From positions 341,632 through 405,631 of the IMG/VR virus record IMGVR_UViG_3300050821_002957: DNA of 64,000 bases, one strand, 5' to 3'. Shown piece by piece: positions 23,509 through 34,436 of the stretch. Numbering within the stretch: position 1 is the stretch's first letter; every line of letters starts with the position of its first letter. Below the pieces are notes generated by a model. That model made no database searches, was not told where the DNA came from, and saw only the letters and a list, made by a program, of their open reading frames with translations. Made by a program: the position numbers and the translations under genes.

Positions 23509-24786
23509 ATGGCAAAGAAAGATAAGAAAGGAGCAAAAAAATCAGAAGGTAGTTTTTTTGACGACTTACTCAAGAAAGTAGGACTGGATATTCCGGTCGC
23601 TACAGAAGTCAATGACATTCACAAAACGACCTTTTTCAGCACTGGATCGTTGATGTTGAATGCACTGGTCTCAAGCTCGATGAATGGTGGTCTGGCAGGC
23701 AATAAGATCACCGCTCTGGCAGGCGAGGAAGCAACCGGAAAGACATTCATCGCCTTGCAGTGCATCAAACACTTCTTGGACGAACAACCCACCGGCCACG
23801 TTTTCATTTTCGATTCAGAAGATGATCCGTCGAAGACTGAAGCTGTGATGAAAAAGCGTGGCATCGATACAAGCCGTGTCCACGTAAAGTTCGTCAAGAC
23901 TATTCAGGAATTCCGTCAACTGATGATCAACATCATTGATGGTTACCTGGAACAGCCGGTCGAAAAGCGCCAGCCGATGTTCATGGTGCTGGATTCGCTT
24001 GGAAACCTTTCGACCCTCAAGGAACTTCATGATACAGCGAAGGGTGCCTTGAACAAGAAGGGCGAAGATGTCAGGGATATGACTCGTACATCTTTGATTC
24101 GTGGTTTGTTCCGTGTGTTGACGATCAAGTTGGGCGAGGCGAATGTTCCGTTGCTCATCACCAATCACACCTATCAGACGATGAATCCGTATGGCGCTGC
24201 AACTACGATGAGTGGCGGCGGCGGTCTTCGGTACGCAGCTTCGACGATCATTTATTTGACCAAGAAGAAATTGCGTGATGCAGACAAGGACGTGATTGGA
24301 TCGATTCTGACGGCAACCCTCGACAAGAGCCGTTTCACTCCTCCAGGATTGAAAGCAGACCTACTCCTGACGCACGCAGCCGGTCTAGACAAATATTGGG
24401 GCCTGTTTGAATTTGGCCTTGAGACCGGAATCCTCATTAAGGGAACAGGTGTCGCAGAGAAAAACGACAAGTCTGGCAAAAAGAATGGAATCAAGGCGAA
24501 TAGCTACAAGTTCCCTGATGGTCAGATTGCCGACCGAAAGGAAATCGAAGCGAACCCATCCATGTACTTCGACACCGACATTAACTTTGCGGCGTTTGAA
24601 GAGCAGTGTGCCAAGACGTTCCAATTCGGTGAAGGTCAGGATCGTCCGATTAGTGATGAAGACGAGGCAGACGGTGAGATCGATATCGATGCAGCCGTCG
24701 CAGCAATGCAGGAAGCCTTTGAAGCAGTGGACGAAGCTGGCGATGCCGAAGTCGAAGAGCAGCCAAAAAAGAAAGGAAAGAAATAG
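23509..24786 (+). CDS. uvsX: RecA-like recombinase
   Basis: STGSLMLNAL, GEEATGKT, LDSLGNL, TNHTY, GGGGLRYAAS. Confidence 0.93.
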   Translation: MAKKDKKGAKKSEGSFFDDLLKKVGLDIPVATEVNDIHKTTFFSTGSLMLNALVSSSMNGGLAGNKITALAGEEATGKTFIALQCIKHFLDEQPTGHVFIFDSEDDPSKTEAVMKKRGIDTSRVHVKFVKTIQEFRQLMINIIDGYLEQPVEKRQPMFMVLDSLGNLSTLKELHDTAKGALNKKGEDVRDMTRTSLIRGLFRVLTIKLGEANVPLLITNHTYQTMNPYGAATTMSGGGGLRYAASTIIYLTKKKLRDADKDVIGSILTATLDKSRFTPPGLKADLLLTHAAGLDKYWGLFEFGLETGILIKGTGVAEKNDKSGKKNGIKANSYKFPDGQIADRKEIEANPSMYFDTDINFAAFEEQCAKTFQFGEGQDRPISDEDEADGEIDIDAAVAAMQEAFEAVDEAGDAEVEEQPKKKGKK

Positions 24787-28044: not shown

Positions 28045-28956
28045 ATGAAGACCTTTGCCCAATTCATGACTGAAGATACGTCCAGCGGTTTCTACGCTTT
28101 TCGTAATCTTAACGCCCAAAGTGCAGAATTCCTCTATGGATGGATGCAGGAACATGGCATTCCTAATCCAATTCCAATGGATAAGCTGCATGTTACGGTA
28201 GTCTGTTCTGAAAACGATGTCCTGGGTTATACACCCGATCCGATGCCACTGCAAATTAGTCCAGCAACTTTTAAACTCGATATGATGAACGAAGCTCTGG
28301 TCATTAAATTCAAAAGTGATGCTCTGGAAGAGCAATGGCAACGAGCAATGAACATGGGTGCAAAGAGTCGATATCCAAAACTCACTCCCCACATCAGTCT
28401 TTCGTACAATGTTCCTCTCGATTACGACTATCATGATCTAAAGCCACCACCATCATTTTTGGTCTTTAATGAAGAGCAGATGCGACCTTTAATCGATGGC
28501 TGGGCGGCGGCAAACAATCTTCGTGAATATACAGGTGACATTATTTCAGACAGGCCGGGGATCTACGTTCCACAAAACAATCTGAACATTCCCCGAGAAG
28601 AGATGCCACAAATCGCCGATCACCACAAAATGGGCTTCGTCGATTGGCTAGAAGAGCAAGGAATTACAGTACAATTTTTAGATATTCCTGTGGCACTTCT
28701 TCGGTCGGTCCAGAATACTATCGACATGAAAAAGGTTCAGCATCTTGCAGATAAGATGCCAGATGCCGCCATGCGAAAGGCGGTTATTGTCTCCAAAGAT
28801 CTCTATATTTTAGATGGTCATCATCGTTGGCTTGCAATTTTGAATCGTGATCCTCATCAGACAATTGAAGCATATCGTGTAAATCTCCCAATCAAGGATC
28901 TACTCGCCATCGCTGGCAATTATCACCAAACCTCCTACAAACTCACAGCGGCTTAA
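28045..28956 (+). CDS. Acb1/gp57B-like 2H phosphodiesterase fused to a ParB-like domain, with capsid-targeting-like N-terminus
   Basis: LHVTVVCS and PHISLSY (2H motifs); IPREEMPQI, VSKDLYILDGHHRW; N-terminus MKTFAQFMTE. Confidence 0.8.
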   Translation: MKTFAQFMTEDTSSGFYAFRNLNAQSAEFLYGWMQEHGIPNPIPMDKLHVTVVCSENDVLGYTPDPMPLQISPATFKLDMMNEALVIKFKSDALEEQWQRAMNMGAKSRYPKLTPHISLSYNVPLDYDYHDLKPPPSFLVFNEEQMRPLIDGWAAANNLREYTGDIISDRPGIYVPQNNLNIPREEMPQIADHHKMGFVDWLEEQGITVQFLDIPVALLRSVQNTIDMKKVQHLADKMPDAAMRKAVIVSKDLYILDGHHRWLAILNRDPHQTIEAYRVNLPIKDLLAIAGNYHQTSYKLTAA

Positions 28957-29285: not shown

Positions 29286-32200
29286 ATGTCACTTTGGAAT
29301 AATCAAACCCCTCCGGTTCTGTACCCGGATGCTGTAGCAACGAACGCAGGTTGGGCACATCCCGTAACTGGTGAATTGCTCGTCTGTGTCACAGGTCTGT
29401 CCACATATAAGAATGAAGGCGCAGGCACACAGCTTGTCAATGCTCGAATCTTGGGCGCAAAAGCTCAGGGCGCAGATCCTATCGTCCACAAGAAAATCTT
29501 TGCTGCTGGCGACGTAATTGTTGTCGAAGCAATTTTCTTGGAGCCTGTCACAAAGACTGGCGGCACACCGACGATGGCAATCAACATCAACGGTAACTCT
29601 CGGACCTTTACCCAATTCACTGATCCGACCAATTTTGATGCAAAAACCAAGGACAAAGTAACTGGTTTCACGATCAGTGCTGGTGGTTCTGGATACTTGG
29701 TCGGTGATAAATTGACCTTCACTGGCGGTGGTGGTTCGAGCGCAGAAGCAGTTGTAGCAACAGTTTCAAGCGGCGCAATCACAGGCATCACATTGCTTGC
29801 TGGTGGTTCTGGATACACTTCGGCTCCGACAGTCGGCGGCGGAACTGGAACGGGAGCAACTATCGTAGCAAAACTCGGTTCACTTGCAAACGGCCCTGGA
29901 ACGAATCGTTGGCTCTTCGGATATACAGTTGCATCTAACGAAACCGCAACCTCGGCACAGATTATTTTCCCATCTAGCATCACTGGTGTCTTCGATACCA
30001 CTGAGGATGCTCTTGGAGCTTCGGCAGCAGGCACAGCCGTTATTGGAACTGGAGTAACTTCCGTAACAGTAAGCGCTGGTGGTTCTGGTTATACATCGGC
30101 ACCGAAAGTTAGCTTTACTGGCGGCACTCCAACGACACCAGCAACAGCAGTAGCAGTTCTTGATCAAAGTGTTGGTTCTATCGCAGTTACCGCAGGTGGT
30201 TCTGGATACACCAGCGCACCCACGGTTACCTTTACAGGTGGCGGTGGATCTAGCTCAGTCGCAACAGCAGTTCTTGCATCGAGTGGTTCAATCAAATCGA
30301 TCACGATCACAAACGGTGGTACAGGCGGAACAAACGGCACTGGTGTAGCAGTTTCGATCACTGGTGGCGGCGGCACTGGAGCAACAGCAACAGCAACAAT
30401 CGCAGGCGGTGTTGTCACAGTGATCACCATAACTGCTGGTGGTTCTGGATACACTTCGGCACCTACTGTCTCGGTAACGGGTCAGGCTGGCTCGCCGGTT
30501 TATGCTCCAGTCATTGGCAAGGTAGTCGCATCAGTCACAGTTGGCACCCCAGGAAGCGGATACACTTCGGCTCCGACCATTGGTTTCACTGGTGGTTCTG
30601 GAAGCGGCGCAACAGCAACGGCTACAATGGCAACATTGACTGATGTACTTGCTGTAACTGTCACGAACCCTGGTGTAGGCTATACGGGCACACCAACCGT
30701 TTCGTTCACTCCTCAGGGCGGTGGCGCAGCAGCAACAATCTCGGTACTTGGTGGAACTGAAGGTTCTGGCAATGTAACCGGCGTAACCATCACAAATGGT
30801 GGAACACTTTATACTACAGCCCCTTCAGTCACTACGACAAGCGGTGGTTCTGGTGTCACCTTCACAGCAGTTTTGACGGGTGGTGTTGTAACCAGCGTAA
30901 CTTTCAGTGGAACTGGTACTGGATACACAAACGGTGACGCTTTGATCTTCACTGGTGGTTTGGCAGGTAGTGGCGCAACGGCAACGGCAACGACCGCAGG
31001 CGCAGTTGAATCGGTCACTATCACAAACGGTGGCTCTGGATACTGGAATGTTCCTACAGTCGCCTTCAGTGGTGGCTCTGGAACTGGTGCAGCAGGCACC
31101 GCAGTAGTCAGCCACGGCAAAGTAACAAGTGTGACGATGACCAACCCAGGAACAGGTTATACTGGTGCTCCTACGGTTGCATTCACAGAGCCATCATCGG
31201 CAGTGACCAATCCAACTTTCAACGGAACACCTTCCGCAGCCGGATACACTGTAAATGGTGTCGCACCGACAATCACAGCAGCAGCAATCTCTGGTTACCA
31301 AACCGGAACAACCTTCGTTACAAACAACATTGTGACCTTGACTCTTACGACAAGCGTCCCGGTTTACGTAACTGGTTCTCCGTACATCACGCTTGAAATC
31401 AATAGCAACCCAGAAACGGCTTCGTATGTAAATGGCAGCGGTACAACTACTTTGATCTTCCAGTACGAAGTTCAAGCAAGTGACTTCTGCACGGCAACGG
31501 AATTTACCATCACTTCCCCAGTTGTTCTCAACAGTGGAACGATGACAGACTTCCAGGGCAATGCTTTGGTCTTGACCTTTACGGCACCTACTGTCACGGC
31601 AGTTGTTGTCAACAGTCCGCTGGTTCCTAGCTTCACAGCAGCAGCGGTAACTGGTGGTCCTGCATACACGACATCCGGCACGGTGACGATCACTTTGACG
31701 GCGAATGTCAACGCAACAGTAGTAACGACAAACGGTACGCCTTATATCGAATTGTACATCGGAAGCAGTGTCCAGCACGCTACCTATGCTTCTGGTACAG
31801 GCACAACGAGCTTGGTCTTCACTTATACAGTGGGTTCGGGCGACGTAGCTACACCAAGAGCATTCTCGATTGGTTCACAAATCTTCTTGGCAGGCGGCAC
31901 GATTCAAAATGCTTCGGCAGTCAACTTCCCAGCATTCTTTACGGCACCTGACACTTCGGAAGATACGGTCAATTCTGGTTCGATTGCAGCATGGGCAAGC
32001 TCGGCTATGAGTGGTTTCAACTCTGGCACTGCTTACATCACTGGAAACAACATCACATTGACGCTTACAGCAAGCGAAAATGCAACCGTCAGCACAGCAA
32101 ACGGTACGCCTTATATCGAATTGTACATCGGAAACGCAACACGTTTTGCAATCTACACTTCAGGTTCGGGAACAACAGCCTTGGTATTCAAGTACACGGC

Positions 32201-32345
32201 TCTTTCGACCGACTCGGCAGTAGCAAAGACCTTCTCTACCGGAGACCAGATCCTATTCAATGGCGGCTCTATCGTAGACGGTTCTTCAAATCACTTCCCT
32301 GAGGACTTCATCGTCCCAGCAACATCAACCATCACTGTCAACTAA
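29286..32345 (+). CDS. Large Gly/Thr-rich repeat virion (fibre/decoration) protein
   Basis: MSLWN start; many (T/S)xGGSGYTSAPTV repeats; C-terminal Ig-like repeats with GSGTTxLxFxY. Confidence 0.75.
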   Translation: MSLWNNQTPPVLYPDAVATNAGWAHPVTGELLVCVTGLSTYKNEGAGTQLVNARILGAKAQGADPIVHKKIFAAGDVIVVEAIFLEPVTKTGGTPTMAININGNSRTFTQFTDPTNFDAKTKDKVTGFTISAGGSGYLVGDKLTFTGGGGSSAEAVVATVSSGAITGITLLAGGSGYTSAPTVGGGTGTGATIVAKLGSLANGPGTNRWLFGYTVASNETATSAQIIFPSSITGVFDTTEDALGASAAGTAVIGTGVTSVTVSAGGSGYTSAPKVSFTGGTPTTPATAVAVLDQSVGSIAVTAGGSGYTSAPTVTFTGGGGSSSVATAVLASSGSIKSITITNGGTGGTNGTGVAVSITGGGGTGATATATIAGGVVTVITITAGGSGYTSAPTVSVTGQAGSPVYAPVIGKVVASVTVGTPGSGYTSAPTIGFTGGSGSGATATATMATLTDVLAVTVTNPGVGYTGTPTVSFTPQGGGAAATISVLGGTEGSGNVTGVTITNGGTLYTTAPSVTTTSGGSGVTFTAVLTGGVVTSVTFSGTGTGYTNGDALIFTGGLAGSGATATATTAGAVESVTITNGGSGYWNVPTVAFSGGSGTGAAGTAVVSHGKVTSVTMTNPGTGYTGAPTVAFTEPSSAVTNPTFNGTPSAAGYTVNGVAPTITAAAISGYQTGTTFVTNNIVTLTLTTSVPVYVTGSPYITLEINSNPETASYVNGSGTTTLIFQYEVQASDFCTATEFTITSPVVLNSGTMTDFQGNALVLTFTAPTVTAVVVNSPLVPSFTAAAVTGGPAYTTSGTVTITLTANVNATVVTTNGTPYIELYIGSSVQHATYASGTGTTSLVFTYTVGSGDVATPRAFSIGSQIFLAGGTIQNASAVNFPAFFTAPDTSEDTVNSGSIAAWASSAMSGFNSGTAYITGNNITLTLTASENATVSTANGTPYIELYIGNATRFAIYTSGSGTTALVFKYTALSTDSAVAKTFSTGDQILFNGGSIVDGSSNHFPEDFIVPATSTITVN
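31729..32133 (+). repeat. 36-bp exact direct repeat between duplicated Ig-like domains
   Basis: CAAACGGTACGCCTTATATCGAATTGTACATCGGAA at 31729-31764 and 32098-32133. Confidence 0.8.
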
Positions 32346-32370: not shown

Positions 32371-32405
32371 GGGCATCTCGTTCATTCGGGATGCCCTTTC
32401 TTTTT
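32371..32405 (+). terminator. Intrinsic terminator
   Basis: GGGCATCTCG-TTCATT-CGGGATGCCC then a T-rich tail. Confidence 0.8.
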
Positions 32406-32423
32406 GTCTAAATATCGTTTAAG

Positions 32424-33698
32424 ATGAAGAGTTATGTGGACATCGTAGAATTTGTACAACCACCACCAAACAATGGTGATCGTCCAATTACATGGACCGA
32501 AATAGCTCAACTTCGAGACTTTTTGGATCAATTGTGGGAGAAACTCGGCATCGATGTTTCTTTTACGAATCACTTCATGGAAAGAGTGAATGATCCTCGG
32601 AATAAGAAACAGATCACTCTAGCCGAACTATCGAAACTGTTCCTTCAGACGTACAAGCAGCATGGAAAGAACATCAGTCTCAAAGTTAAGCCAGAAAGTG
32701 ATGGCGAATTTGAAGCTGTTTTGACGGATCTAAGTACGAAGATAAATTTGCCGTTTGCGCTGGAATGGAACCGCAAACAAAGAGAATTGAAGATGGTTGC
32801 AAAGACGGTCATGCGAAAAGACAATTTCGTGCCGTCCTATAACAACGGTGGGCATCAGAAGACAGTTCCAAAGTTGACAGTACAGCATTTTGAACCGGAG
32901 AATACTATGAAAAGCAAAACTTATAGCGACCTGAAAGAGTGGGTAAATTCTGACGGCAGCAAACAATTGAACGAGTTTGTTGGCTTCGACACTCCAGAAG
33001 TGGCACCAATCGCTTCTACTCAAGCAGTCGATGACGTAGACTCTGCCGCCTTCGCTGTCGATCAACCGGAAATTTTGGACAAGCTCAACGCATACTGTGG
33101 CGAGATTGCAAATCATCAGTACATCAATCCATATTATCCTCTGAACGCACTCTGGAAGAAGCTCAGTATGGTCGGCATCAACTTCAATTTGAAGTCGGTC
33201 ATGTTGACTGGTCCGATGGGAAGCACGACAGTTCCTCTGAATCGGTTTGGTGGGCGCTACGGCACGTTAGGAGGCCCTGAATACGTCTCCCATGACGATG
33301 GCACCGGAATTCCTGGCGGGTTGTCCTTGATCGTTTCCTGGGCTAAGACTGGCGGTGTGTATTCTTTGAATGCTCACATCGAACACGGCTCGACGGCTAT
33401 GGGGTTCGGTGAGTCAGTCAATGAAGAACTTATTCATGGAAAAAAGTTGAACCCTGAACAACATAAAAAAGTGTTGTCTGCTTACGTCCACCGTCATACC
33501 GGAGAACACAAACCAGCATGGGCAAAGAAGCCAATGCAAAATGGACAAGCATATAAACCGACTCATGCTACAGATAAAGAATGGGTTCATGATCATGCCT
33601 TCCACTTCAATAAGGGTACTAACAATCTAAGCGCAAAACACAAGTACGCTGAACCTGGATTCATGGCCGAAGCAGATCAGCCTTTAAAAAAAAAGTAA
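32424..33698 (+). CDS. Multidomain late/head-associated hypothetical protein; probable -1 frameshift extension to 34024
   Basis: FTNHFMERVNDPRN domain; internal GGAG + ATG at 32907; ends A-AAA-AAG-TAA. Confidence 0.7.
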   Translation: MKSYVDIVEFVQPPPNNGDRPITWTEIAQLRDFLDQLWEKLGIDVSFTNHFMERVNDPRNKKQITLAELSKLFLQTYKQHGKNISLKVKPESDGEFEAVLTDLSTKINLPFALEWNRKQRELKMVAKTVMRKDNFVPSYNNGGHQKTVPKLTVQHFEPENTMKSKTYSDLKEWVNSDGSKQLNEFVGFDTPEVAPIASTQAVDDVDSAAFAVDQPEILDKLNAYCGEIANHQYINPYYPLNALWKKLSMVGINFNLKSVMLTGPMGSTTVPLNRFGGRYGTLGGPEYVSHDDGTGIPGGLSLIVSWAKTGGVYSLNAHIEHGSTAMGFGESVNEELIHGKKLNPEQHKKVLSAYVHRHTGEHKPAWAKKPMQNGQAYKPTHATDKEWVHDHAFHFNKGTNNLSAKHKYAEPGFMAEADQPLKKK

Positions 33699-34024
33699 CC
33701 GCTGAAGTAGCTCATCTTTCCCCTCAGAACAAACCGGGCGGATACTTCCATCAGGAGATCCGCCATCCTGGTAATCACTCATCCGTCAAGATCACAGCAG
33801 AAACCCCACAAGGACCATTTTACGTGCGCCTGTACACTCATTATGCGGACAAGCACACTGATAAGCACTCTCAGGAAAAGACACTCAAAGCTGCTTATGC
33901 ATGGGCATCGAAACATTTAGGTCTGCCAGTAAAGTTGAAAGAGATTGAAGACGATGAAGAGTCAAGAACATTACCTTCATCTTCACCGAATTCTATGATT
34001 GATACAGCTTTCGGGATTTACTAG
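33686..34024 (+). CDS. -1 frame extension of the upstream gene
   Basis: Frame open 33653-34024, no start codon until GTG 33824; begins at the slippery site. Confidence 0.55.
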   Translation, partial: KKKVTAEVAHLSPQNKPGGYFHQEIRHPGNHSSVKITAETPQGPFYVRLYTHYADKHTDKHSQEKTLKAAYAWASKHLGLPVKLKEIEDDEESRTLPSSSPNSMIDTAFGIY

Positions 34025-34043: not shown

Positions 34044-34436
34044 ATGAATTTTCCACAACTTACGAATGAAAATATTTTGATGTTTGCTATGAAGCACTAT
34101 GATAATCCTGCTGCTCAAGGCATCCATGAATTCGCCGAAGACTTTGACCGAATCAAATACGTCAAACGATTGTTCAAGAGGTATCAACTCAAGACAGTTC
34201 TAAAGGAGCGGCTTATATTGAACCACATTATCATTGTCTATAATGTGTTTGGACCGGAAGCGGCGACGAGGATATTGTTCTTTCGCCTTGAATCTGATCT
34301 ATGGCCTATCTTAAAGACGTTTTTGGTGTTTTTAAACTTCATGCCAGATCGTATTCATGGGATAGATGGAAAAGACATCATTTCATCGGATATCACTCTA
34401 GACTTGCAGTTGATTGACAAATTGAGGAAGATTTAA
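34044..34436 (+). CDS. Conserved T4-like hypothetical protein
   Basis: FAMKHYDNP, EDFDRIKYVKRLF, ERLILNHII. Confidence 0.8.
   Translation: MNFPQLTNENILMFAMKHYDNPAAQGIHEFAEDFDRIKYVKRLFKRYQLKTVLKERLILNHIIIVYNVFGPEAATRILFFRLESDLWPILKTFLVFLNFMPDRIHGIDGKDIISSDITLDLQLIDKLRKI

What the first reader, a model, noticed from the sequence alone, without database searches (positions are those of the whole stretch)
33653..34024. Probable programmed -1 frameshift extending a late protein
The 32424 gene ends CCT TTA AAA AAA AAG TAA, with the canonical slippery heptamer A-AAA-AAG (33689-33695) in the correct phase just before the stop. The -1 frame stays open for about 110 codons (VTAEVAHLSPQNKPGG...TAFGIY) to 34024, fills the gap to the next gene and has no start codon for about 45 codons after the site. 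With the internal RBS + ATG at 32907, up to four isoforms are possible. Transcriptional slippage on the A9 run is an alternative mechanism.
Basis: partly seen in the sequence, partly recalled or inferred. Interest (0 to 1): 0.68.

Follow-up and report, generated by a model that had tools for sequence, protein, structure and literature searches.

The report
Conserved A9 frameshift site, phage gene
A run of nine A's at the very end of a probable late gene in a 405-kb T4-like phage is a slip site conserved across many related phages; it most likely lets some transcripts or ribosomes change reading frame and add a 109-residue domain, so that one gene gives a short and a long protein.

Summary
ORF 32424-33698 ends CCT TTA AAA AAA AAG TAA. 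The A9 run (33686-33694) is the longest homopolymer in the window. The -1 frame is open for 109 codons to 34024 and has no start codon before codon 44.

Comparison with relatives decides the case. At least 14 distinct metagenomic relatives share only 47-64% identity (89% for L087) in the middle domain and have unalignable flanks. All end NTA AAA AAA AAG TA[A/G] and continue in the -1 frame for 84-468 codons. The extension evolves as protein (dN/dS 0.12). One relative carries it fused in frame through an A10 run. 25 of 35 called homologues end in KKK. In-frame copies of the same KKVTE linker mostly have interrupted A runs.

A sequencing error is unlikely, because the identical 424-residue product occurs on 7 contigs from at least 5 samples.

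So this is a conserved programmed recoding site (about 0.85). Mechanism is not settled. I favour RNA-polymerase slippage on A9, adding one A (about 0.5). Ribosomal -1 shifting on A_AAA_AAG is the close rival.

The gene looks late and possibly head-internal, but that is a lead only. Read evidence could not be obtained.

The parts
32371..32406 (+). Terminator-like hairpin plus T-run that ends the upstream 1019-aa repeat-protein gene
   Evidence: 10-bp stem, 7 GC pairs, T-rich tail. The same arrangement is present in relative L087.
32408..32414 (+). CTAAATA motif, late-promoter-like, 9 nt upstream of the ATG
   Evidence: Sequence. It is conserved with its flanks in L087. 47 of 79 genome copies lie within 40 nt upstream of ATG ORFs, including the Gp23 major capsid gene. 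Function is inferred by analogy with T4 late promoters.
32424..33698 (+). Zero-frame gene, 424 aa (P0001). It has a CTS-like N-terminus, a RegB/RelE-like N domain (about 20-150), a middle domain (about 165-332) and a variable C module (336-424), and ends LKKK-stop.
32897..32909 (+). GGAG plus 6 nt plus ATG (M162): a possible internal start that would give a product lacking the N domain
   Evidence: Stand-alone homologues start here (P0026, P0033, P0035, P0038, P0040), and the L087 gene starts at this Met. It has not been shown to be used in this phage.
33686..33694 (+). A9 run, the slip site. Heptamer A_AAA_AAG is 33689-33695.
   Evidence: A pure A9 (A10 in one case) is found at every out-of-frame junction of relatives. 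It is kept by the rare NTA codon.
33696..33698 (+). Zero-frame TAA stop directly after the slip site, overlapping the first -1 codon GTA
   Evidence: It is TAA or TAG in all relatives, made possible by Val always being GTA.
33695..34024 (+). -1 frame extension, 109 codons plus stop (P0002): a conserved small beta-sheet-plus-helix module and a short acidic/hydrophobic tail

Best explanation
The A9 tract at 33686-33694 is a conserved programmed recoding site. Standard decoding gives a 424-residue protein that stops at TAA right after LKKK. A fraction of expression events enter the -1 frame and give a 533-residue protein (...PLKKK-VTAEV...GIY) that carries an extra 109-residue C-terminal module.

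I judge recoding of either kind about 0.85 likely. The mechanism I commit to is transcriptional slippage, at about 0.5; the confidence given for this field is for that specific mechanism. In this view the host RNA polymerase realigns on the 9-nt homopolymer and adds one A. A subpopulation of mRNAs then has A10, and normal ribosomes read these straight through.

Shown: the site, its phase, its conservation, coding selection on the extension, and the absence of a start codon in the extension. Inferred: that slippage happens, its level, and which enzyme slips.

The gene itself is probably late. It may be a head-internal, injected protein with swappable C-terminal modules joined by KKKVTE linkers. 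That is a lead, not a finding.
For: Evidence for recoding:
1. At least 14 distinct loci end NTA AAA AAA AAG TA[A/G] and carry -1 ORFs of 84-468 codons. These are L003-L006, L009, L010, L087-L092, L096 and L097. They share 47-64% identity with the window in the middle domain (L087 89%), and their flanks cannot be aligned.
2. The extension is homologous across these loci (alignment A3).
3. Against L087 the extension has dN/dS 0.12 at dS 1.07 in the -1 frame. The other two frames give values above 1 and contain 6-7 stops.
4. P0015 has the module fused in frame through A10, with LKKKVT matching the window exactly if one A is added.
5. 25 of 35 called homologues with a complete middle domain end in KKK.
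6. There is no consistent start codon in the first 40-60 codons of the extensions.
7. A sequencing error is unlikely. The identical 424-aa product lies on 7 contigs from at least 5 samples, and on L001 and L086 the A9 can be read directly. Assemblies do report A10 elsewhere. One contig, L006, has both an in-frame and an out-of-frame A9.
8. There is nucleotide-level selection. The preceding Leu/Val codon is always NTA (14% and 19% usage) and the following Val is always GTA. In-frame KKVTE linkers in the same family mostly have interrupted runs and other Val codons.

Evidence for slippage rather than ribosomal shifting:
1. The run is never shorter than 9. That is the length at which bacterial RNAP slips efficiently and the length of the RNA-DNA hybrid (PMC5009743). 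It is two A's more than the heptamer needs.
2. There is no conserved 3' structure (mean z -0.19 over 13 loci) and no 5' SD-like element.
3. The phage encodes both tRNA-Lys(UUU) and tRNA-Lys(CUU). The review links this situation to the use of slippage instead of frameshifting in Thermus dnaX.
4. Reporter data show that efficiency grows with A-run length: 7 As 10%, 9 As 40% (PMC3711429).
Against: - There are no RNA, read or protein data.
- The G after the run and the phase give a perfect A_AAA_AAG heptamer with an adjacent stop. That fits ribosomal -1 shifting equally well.
- Both mechanisms give the same protein.
- Host and host tRNA/RNAP properties are unknown.
- DNA-level length variation of the run within the phage population was not examined.
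Confidence: 0.5

Rival explanations
1. Ribosomal -1 programmed frameshifting. Lys-tRNAs slip back one base on A_AAA_AAG (33689-33695), or a P-site tRNA-Lys slips while the adjacent TAA waits in the A site, and translation continues in the -1 frame.
For: - The canonical heptamer is in the correct phase in the window and in every relative, with a zero-frame stop directly after it.
- A_AAA_AAG is the most shift-prone heptamer in E. coli and is the dnaX site. Some dnaX genes have the stop directly after the shift site (PMC5009743).
- The evidence for recoding in general applies equally here.
Against: - There is no conserved downstream hairpin or pseudoknot and no upstream SD-like stimulator.
- The two extra 5' A's, kept by a rare NTA codon in all sites, are not needed for tandem slippage.
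- The phage carries tRNA-Lys(CUU), which should hold AAG firmly (reasoning).
- The invariant G is also required to make Val GTA and the stop, so it is not specific evidence.
Confidence: 0.33
2. DNA-level phase variation only. The A9 tract changes length during phage DNA replication. Genomes with A10 make only the long protein and genomes with A9 only the short one. There is no RNA-level recoding.
For: - In-frame variants exist in nature (L002 with A10, P0017).
- Homopolymers are slippery for DNA polymerases (PMC3711429).
- Three short contigs of this phage break about 74 nt after the stop, which hints at population heterogeneity nearby.
Against: - 16 of 18 junctions in independent assemblies are in the out-of-frame state, and all 7 contigs of this phage give the 424-aa product. 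The out-of-frame state is therefore the stable majority.
- The extension nevertheless shows strong purifying selection.
- The run length is fixed at 9, not scattered.
Confidence: 0.08
3. Artefact or decay. Either the true sequence is A10 and the A9 is a homopolymer miscall, or the gene is a recent frameshift pseudogene and the extension is not made.
For: Homopolymers are the classic place for indel errors. A relative with A10 reads through.
Against: - The same A9 is found in 7 contigs from at least 5 samples and pipelines.
- The same state is found in at least 14 diverged relatives.
- L006 carries an in-frame A9 and an out-of-frame A9 on one contig.
- The extension has dN/dS 0.12 and no stops, which is not decay.
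Confidence: 0.03
4. The downstream ORF is a separate gene, translated from its own (possibly non-canonical) start or by termination-reinitiation.
For: Gene callers call a 66-aa ORF from GTG 33824. In L005 a TTG with GAGG lies at codon 6.
Against: - GTG 33824 lies in the middle of the conserved module (GPFYVRLY) and has no SD.
- L004 has no start codon in its first 60 codons, and start positions are not conserved.
- Protein conservation begins at the junction itself (KKKVT).
- In P0015 the module is part of the upstream protein.
Confidence: 0.03

Closest known systems
Thermus thermophilus dnaX (tau/gamma) by transcriptional slippage on a 9-nt A/T run
   Same: A homopolymer of 9 sits inside a coding region. 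RNA polymerase adds extra A's, and two protein lengths come from one gene. Two Lys tRNAs are present, as in this phage (PMC5009743).
   Different: In Thermus the long product is the unshifted one and slippage truncates it. Here the unshifted product is short and slippage would extend it. The gene family is unrelated, and this is a phage gene. Slippage is not demonstrated here.
E. coli dnaX and IS3/IS911-type -1 frameshifting on A_AAA_AAG
   Same: The heptamer and phase are identical. In some dnaX genes the zero-frame stop lies directly after the site.
   Different: Those sites rely on an upstream SD-like element and a downstream hairpin or pseudoknot. Neither is conserved here. Here the run is always at least 9 A.
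Shigella spa13 / mxiE transcriptional slippage
   Same: Slippage on a homopolymer adds a C-terminal extension of about 110 residues to a fraction of the product (25-30% for spa13).
   Different: That is a bacterial secretion-system gene. There is no family relationship.
Tail assembly chaperone G/GT -1 frameshift of dsDNA phages
   Same: It is a conserved phage recoding event that gives a fixed ratio of a short and a C-terminally extended late protein.
   Different: The gene, the position in the genome (here among replication genes, next to DUF7207) and the slippery sequence (G_GGA_AAG type) all differ. P0001 has no similarity to chaperones.
T4 internal head proteins IPII/IPIII (capsid targeting sequence)
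   Same: The N-terminus MKxYxx[IL]hxE resembles the T4 sequence MKTYQEFIAE. The C-terminal parts are hypervariable, as described for T-even internal proteins (PMC3012670). The upstream motif is late-promoter-like.
   Different: There is no sequence homology beyond about 10 residues. The protein is much larger. Packaging and cleavage are untested.
T4 endoribonuclease RegB / RelE-family toxins
   Same: The best structural match of the N domain is RegB (2hx6: Z 6.4, rmsd 4.6, 116 residues aligned), followed by many RelE-type toxins. The invariant H50-x3-R54 aligns with an H-x3-R in RegB.
   Different: Z is in the range the tool calls common. hhalign is not significant (E 0.08). No activity is known.

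Membership tests
Programmed transcriptional slippage (realignment) sites | Homopolymeric A or T run of about 9 or more within the coding region | tested here: met
   A9 at 33686-33694. The run is A9 (A10 once) in all 15-16 out-of-frame junctions of relatives. The threshold is taken from PMC5009743.
Programmed transcriptional slippage (realignment) sites | Frames arranged so that insertion of one base gives a conserved, functional alternative product | tested here: met
   A10 would read LKKKVTAE..., which is identical in register to the natural in-frame fusion P0015. Extension dN/dS is 0.12.
Programmed transcriptional slippage (realignment) sites | mRNA population heterogeneous in run length while the DNA is homogeneous | not testable with these tools
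-1 programmed ribosomal frameshift sites (bacterial/phage) | Slippery heptamer X_XXY_YYZ in zero-frame phase | tested here: met
   A_AAA_AAG at 33689-33695 is in phase and conserved in relatives.
-1 programmed ribosomal frameshift sites (bacterial/phage) | Open, conserved -1 ORF without its own start | tested here: met
-1 programmed ribosomal frameshift sites (bacterial/phage) | Stimulatory element: a 3' hairpin or pseudoknot 5-9 nt downstream and/or a 5' SD-like sequence | tested here: not met
   Downstream 60 nt of 13 loci: mean z -0.19, no shared structure, sequence not alignable. No SD-like motif lies upstream. Stimulators are usual but not obligatory.
-1 programmed ribosomal frameshift sites (bacterial/phage) | Transframe protein detected | not testable with these tools
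   No proteomic data.
T4-type internal head proteins | N-terminal capsid targeting sequence ending in a prohead-protease site (hydrophobic-x-E) | tested here: inconclusive
   The window protein starts MKSYVDIVE and the family follows MKx[YF]xx[IL]hxE. T4 IPII/IPIII start MKTYQEFIAE. This is a resemblance over about 10 residues only.
T4-type internal head proteins | Late expression and presence in the virion | tested here: inconclusive
   A CTAAATA motif is shared with the major capsid gene. Virion content is not testable.
RegB/RelE-fold endoribonucleases | Fold: N-terminal helices packed on an antiparallel sheet, with catalytic His/Arg | tested here: inconclusive
   AF2 N domain has pLDDT above 90. 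RegB Z 6.4 and RelE Z 5-6. The H-x3-R alignment is not significant. Foldseek E is about 0.1.

The most novel reading that the evidence does not exclude
T-A9-GTA(A/G), read as [L/V]KKK-stop in frame 0 and KKKVT[E/D] in frame -1, may be a portable module-junction cassette in environmental phages.

In this reading it does two things at once. It serves as a recombination joint for swapping C-terminal modules. It also acts as a built-in stochastic isoform generator through polymerase slippage, so that a packaged or injected protein is made with and without its last module.

The same 18-mer also ends unrelated phage ORFs, each followed by a -1 ORF of 95 codons or more. These include an SSB-like gene, phrog_14154 virion proteins and an endolysin-like gene. 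The device may therefore be general rather than specific to one gene family.
Probability: 0.25. Interest if true: 0.75.

Novelty: new member of a known kind. Interest (0 to 1): 0.58.

Why it matters
Recoding sites in phages are known mainly from tail chaperones, T7 gene 10 and a few others. Here an uncultured family of very large T4-like phages keeps a homopolymer slip site at the end of a hypervariable, probably late gene.

Three consequences follow.

1. Gene callers systematically miss a conserved 84-468-residue C-terminal part. 25 of 35 database entries stop at KKK, and the extension appears only as orphan fragments.
2. The contrast between pure A9 at out-of-frame joints and interrupted runs at in-frame joints is a clean natural experiment on selection for slippery homopolymers.
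3. If the protein is an injected effector, the site would set the ratio of two effector forms. That is directly testable.

The site also offers a compact, stimulator-free cassette for comparing polymerase and ribosome slippage.

Tried and rejected
I sought run or read evidence by no other tool. A-run length therefore rests on independent assemblies only.
- Cultured phages. megablast of the region found nothing. tblastn of the extension found nothing. P0001 matched only domain by domain.
- Family scans. Pfam and PHROGs gave nothing for the extension, and only unnamed PHROGs for the N domain of P0001. Longer extensions of relatives gave nothing except a sub-threshold Gp23 stretch.
- Word searches. 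P0015 residues 376-484 found only itself. P0002 found 5 short fragments. The large representative search was not run, because it carries no annotation and the claim does not rest on absence of relatives.
- Fold searches. The extension had no PDB match. For P0001, Foldseek gave only E of about 0.1, and VIA-align gave RegB/RelE at middling Z. hhalign against RegB was not significant.
- Downstream stimulatory RNA structure: none, and none conserved. Upstream SD: none.
- The T4 late promoter consensus TATAAATA has 0 copies in the window. The variant CTAAATA is the enriched motif.
- Ribosome sliding on poly(A) was considered and set aside. It is reported weak at A9/A10 (PMC4363877).
- Alternative genetic code or stop read-through was rejected, because the extension is in another frame.

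Full report
**1. What is in the sequence**

The window is the last 64 kb (C1:341632-405631) of a 405,631-bp virus record rated complete. Its genes mark it as a very large T4-like phage. They include a UvsX-like recombinase, a DnaB-type helicase, a primase and an Acb1-like protein in the window, and a Gp23 major capsid protein elsewhere in the genome.

ORF 32424-33698 (424 aa, P0001) ends CCT TTA AAA AAA AAG TAA. The features at the site are:
- A9 run: 33686-33694.
- Heptamer A_AAA_AAG: 33689-33695, in phase.
- Zero-frame stop: 33696-33698.

The -1 frame from 33695 is open for 109 codons, to a stop at 34022-34024. That is 20 nt before the DUF7207 gene at 34044. The first start codon in that frame is GTG at codon 44.

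On its own the site would not be remarkable. There are 9 in-phase A_AAA_AAG heptamers in long open frames in the window, and about 0.65 A9 runs are expected by composition. Even so, it is the longest homopolymer in the window and one of only two runs of 9 or more in 405 kb.

**2. Comparative evidence**

P0001 has no Pfam family, but it has many metagenomic homologues. They share an N domain (about 17-138), a middle domain (about 165-332) and very variable C-terminal parts.

I fetched DNA for relatives by exact-protein look-up and by pattern scans. The window's own junction recurs on two further contigs of this same phage, L001 and L086, and in 14 distinct relatives: L003, L004, L005, L006, L009, L010, L087-L092, L096 and L097. 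Each zero-frame gene ends NTA AAA AAA AAG TA[A/G]. L009 has GAA and A10 in the same 3' phase. In each, the -1 frame continues for 84-468 codons, except where the contig ends.

Flanks on both sides are too diverged to align. Only T-A9-GTA is shared.

Most of the -1 ORFs begin KKKVT and are built of modules. One module is the one present in the window, with the pattern GYFHQE[IV]R..VKITA..GPF.[VI]R..LK.AY.WA. Most end in an acidic tail with the pattern ..IGLDDRLYTE..SGRLYTx. The window has a short version..MIDTAFGIY.

Further points:
- Against the close relative L087, the extension has 73 differences in 327 nt, 44 of them at third positions. dN/dS is 0.12 at dS 1.07. The other two frames give values above 1 and contain 6-7 stops.
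- One relative, P0015 (locus L002), has A10 and reads ...DLKKKVTTE... straight into the same module (59% identity, E 2e-22). The window matches this register exactly if one A is added.
- Among 35 called homologues with a complete middle domain, 25 end in KKK.
- More distant relatives (L007, L008; about 37% identity) lack the site.

**3. Selection acts on the nucleotides, not only on the peptide**

The codon before the lysines is always TTA, CTA or GTA, and the Val codon after them is always GTA. In this genome NTA makes up 14% of Leu codons, GTA 19% of Val codons and AAA 47% of Lys codons.

The same KKV[T]E linker also occurs in frame inside these proteins. There it is mostly written with interrupted runs (AAG AAA, AAA AAG) and with GTC, GTT or GTG for Val: L005 3593, L096 3692, L097 4066 and L091 3154. 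L010 4776 has AAA AAA GTA, only six A's. Only L002 (A10) and L006 3973 (A9) are pure in-frame runs.

So a perfect run of 9 or more is kept where, and almost only where, a frame change is needed.

**4. Alternatives excluded or weakened**

*Sequencing error.*
- The identical 424-residue product is on 7 contigs from at least 5 samples and 3 pipelines.
- On L001 and L086 I read the A9 directly.
- Assemblies do report A10 elsewhere.
- Contig L006 carries one in-frame and one out-of-frame A9.

*Pseudogene.* The extension is under purifying selection.

*Separate gene.* There is no conserved start. L004 has none in 60 codons. The window's only candidate, GTG, sits inside the conserved core and has no SD.

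*DNA-level phase variation alone.* This cannot be excluded without reads. It fits poorly with 16 of 18 junctions being out of frame and with the fixed run length.

I looked for read evidence by no other tool.

**5. Mechanism**

Both candidates give the same 533-residue protein.

In favour of ribosomal -1 shifting: a perfect A_AAA_AAG heptamer in phase, with an adjacent stop. This arrangement is also seen in some dnaX genes (PMC5009743).

In favour of RNA-polymerase slippage:
- The run is never shorter than 9. That is the length at which bacterial RNA polymerase slips efficiently and the length of its RNA-DNA hybrid. The two A's beyond the heptamer are held by a rare codon.
- No downstream structure is conserved or unusually stable (mean z -0.19 over 13 loci), and there is no upstream SD-like element.
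- The phage encodes tRNA-Lys(CUU) as well as tRNA-Lys(UUU). The review links that situation to the use of slippage rather than frameshifting in Thermus dnaX.
- Reporter efficiencies rise with run length: 7 As 10%, 9 As 40%, 11 As 63% (PMC3711429).

Ribosome sliding is reported weak at A9/A10 (PMC4363877).

My estimates are:

| Explanation | Probability |
|---|---|
| Recoding of either kind | about 0.85 |
| Transcriptional slippage as the main route | about 0.5 |
| Ribosomal -1 shifting as the main route | about 0.33 |

**6. What the gene is (leads, not findings)**

*Upstream region.* A terminator-like hairpin (32371-32396 plus T-run) is followed by CTAAATA (32408-32414), 9 nt before the ATG. 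This motif and its flanks are conserved in L087. 47 of its 79 genome copies lie within 40 nt upstream of ATG ORFs, and one lies 41 nt before the major capsid gene. T4's own late consensus TATAAATA is absent from the window. By analogy, this is a late promoter.

*N-terminus.* The window protein starts MKSYVDIVE, and the family follows MKx[YF]xx[IL]hxE. This resembles the capsid targeting sequence MKTYQEFIAE of T4 IPII/IPIII. Those proteins are described as a hypervariable set of injected anti-defence proteins sharing only that sequence (PMC3012670).

*N domain.* It models confidently (pLDDT above 90). Its best structural match is T4 RegB (Z 6.4, 116 residues), followed by RelE-type toxins. Sequence support is not significant. 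In other phages this domain is fused to various enzymes, including PAP2 and cytidylyltransferase-like domains.

*Extension module.* It models as five strands plus a helix (pLDDT 68) and has no PDB match.

*Internal start at 32907.* The ATG has GGAG 6 nt upstream. It is where stand-alone homologues and the L087 gene begin.

**7. Comparison with known systems and novelty**

The site works like known homopolymer or heptamer recoding sites: Thermus and E. coli dnaX, Shigella spa13/mxiE, IS elements and phage G/GT. It meets the sequence-level criteria of both classes, except for the usual stimulators of ribosomal frameshifting.

The gene family, its position in the genome and the phage group are new for recoding as far as the libraries I searched show. 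I file it as a new member of a known kind.

A wider possibility remains untested. The exact 18-mer T-A9-GTAACTGA occurs in 40 IMG/VR loci. In about 13 of them it ends a long ORF and is followed by a -1 ORF of 95 codons or more. These are unrelated genes: SSB-like, phrog_14154 virion protein, endolysin-like and unknowns. That search was biased by the pattern I chose and was not controlled.

Noticed in passing
outside the window: G000:C1:72151-72159 (minus strand): The only other homopolymer of 9 or more in the 405-kb genome is a T9. It reads as an in-frame CCT AAA AAA AAA GTT (DPKKKVSA) linker inside a 583-aa minus-strand ORF. If RNA polymerase slips on A9, that gene would also give truncated forms. 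The ORF's own end (AAG AAG AAG TAA ATG) is not slippery.
   Followed up: partly
L108 9026-9043, L109 10695-10712, L116 909-926, L111 37-54, L120 2239-2256, L123 10714-10731, L102 7071-7088: The exact 18-mer T-A9-GTAACTGA ends long ORFs of unrelated phage genes, each followed by a long -1 ORF (95-135 codons where the contig allows; the L111 contig ends after 14). The genes are SSB-like, phrog_14154 virion structural protein, endolysin-like and unknowns. About 24 other hits carry the 18-mer in frame. The search was biased by the chosen pattern and had no control.
   Followed up: partly
L010 4668-6071 (extension residues 370-396): The 468-codon -1 extension of this relative contains a stretch (..IGVQPMNGPTGQMF..) that weakly matches positions 18-44 of the Gp23 major capsid Pfam model (E 5.6e-4, below the cut-off). 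This may be a hint of capsid association.
   Followed up: no
window 32408-32414 and genome-wide: CTAAATA behaves as a promoter-like motif. 47 of 79 copies lie within 40 nt upstream of ATG ORFs, often only 5-10 nt before the ATG, which suggests very short leaders. It also precedes the gp23 gene. TATAAATA is not enriched.
   Followed up: partly
outside the window: G000:C1 3664-296296 and 183192-183533: The phage encodes 44 tRNAs, including both Lys isoacceptors and the tRNAs for the rare NTA codons, and a tmRNA with tag ANAPAFAFAAAA.
   Followed up: no
L001 (ends at 1856); two further short contigs: Three independent short contigs that carry the identical gene all start about 470-510 nt before it and break about 40-75 nt after its stop, inside the extension. 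This suggests strain-level divergence of the extension within samples.
   Followed up: no
window 24765-24771: Another in-phase A_AAA_AAG lies 4 codons before the stop of the UvsX-like gene (23509-24786). Its -1 frame is open for only 29 codons. It is probably chance.
   Followed up: no
locus of P0009 (no DNA held): In this relative a GIY-YIG homing-endonuclease gene and a 325-aa ORF lie between the KK-ending gene and DUF7207. The junction region may be a target for mobile endonucleases.
   Followed up: no
window 28045-28956: A 303-aa protein has an N-terminal Acb1 (anti-CBASS phosphodiesterase) domain (Pfam E 5e-22). It lies two genes upstream, with the 1019-aa repeat protein between them. Some N-domain homologues of P0001 are themselves fused to Acb1.
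   Followed up: no
window 29286-32345: The 1019-aa upstream protein consists of repeats that match many PHROG 'virion structural / baseplate / fibre' families. Its length varies in relatives (684-1025 aa).
   Followed up: no
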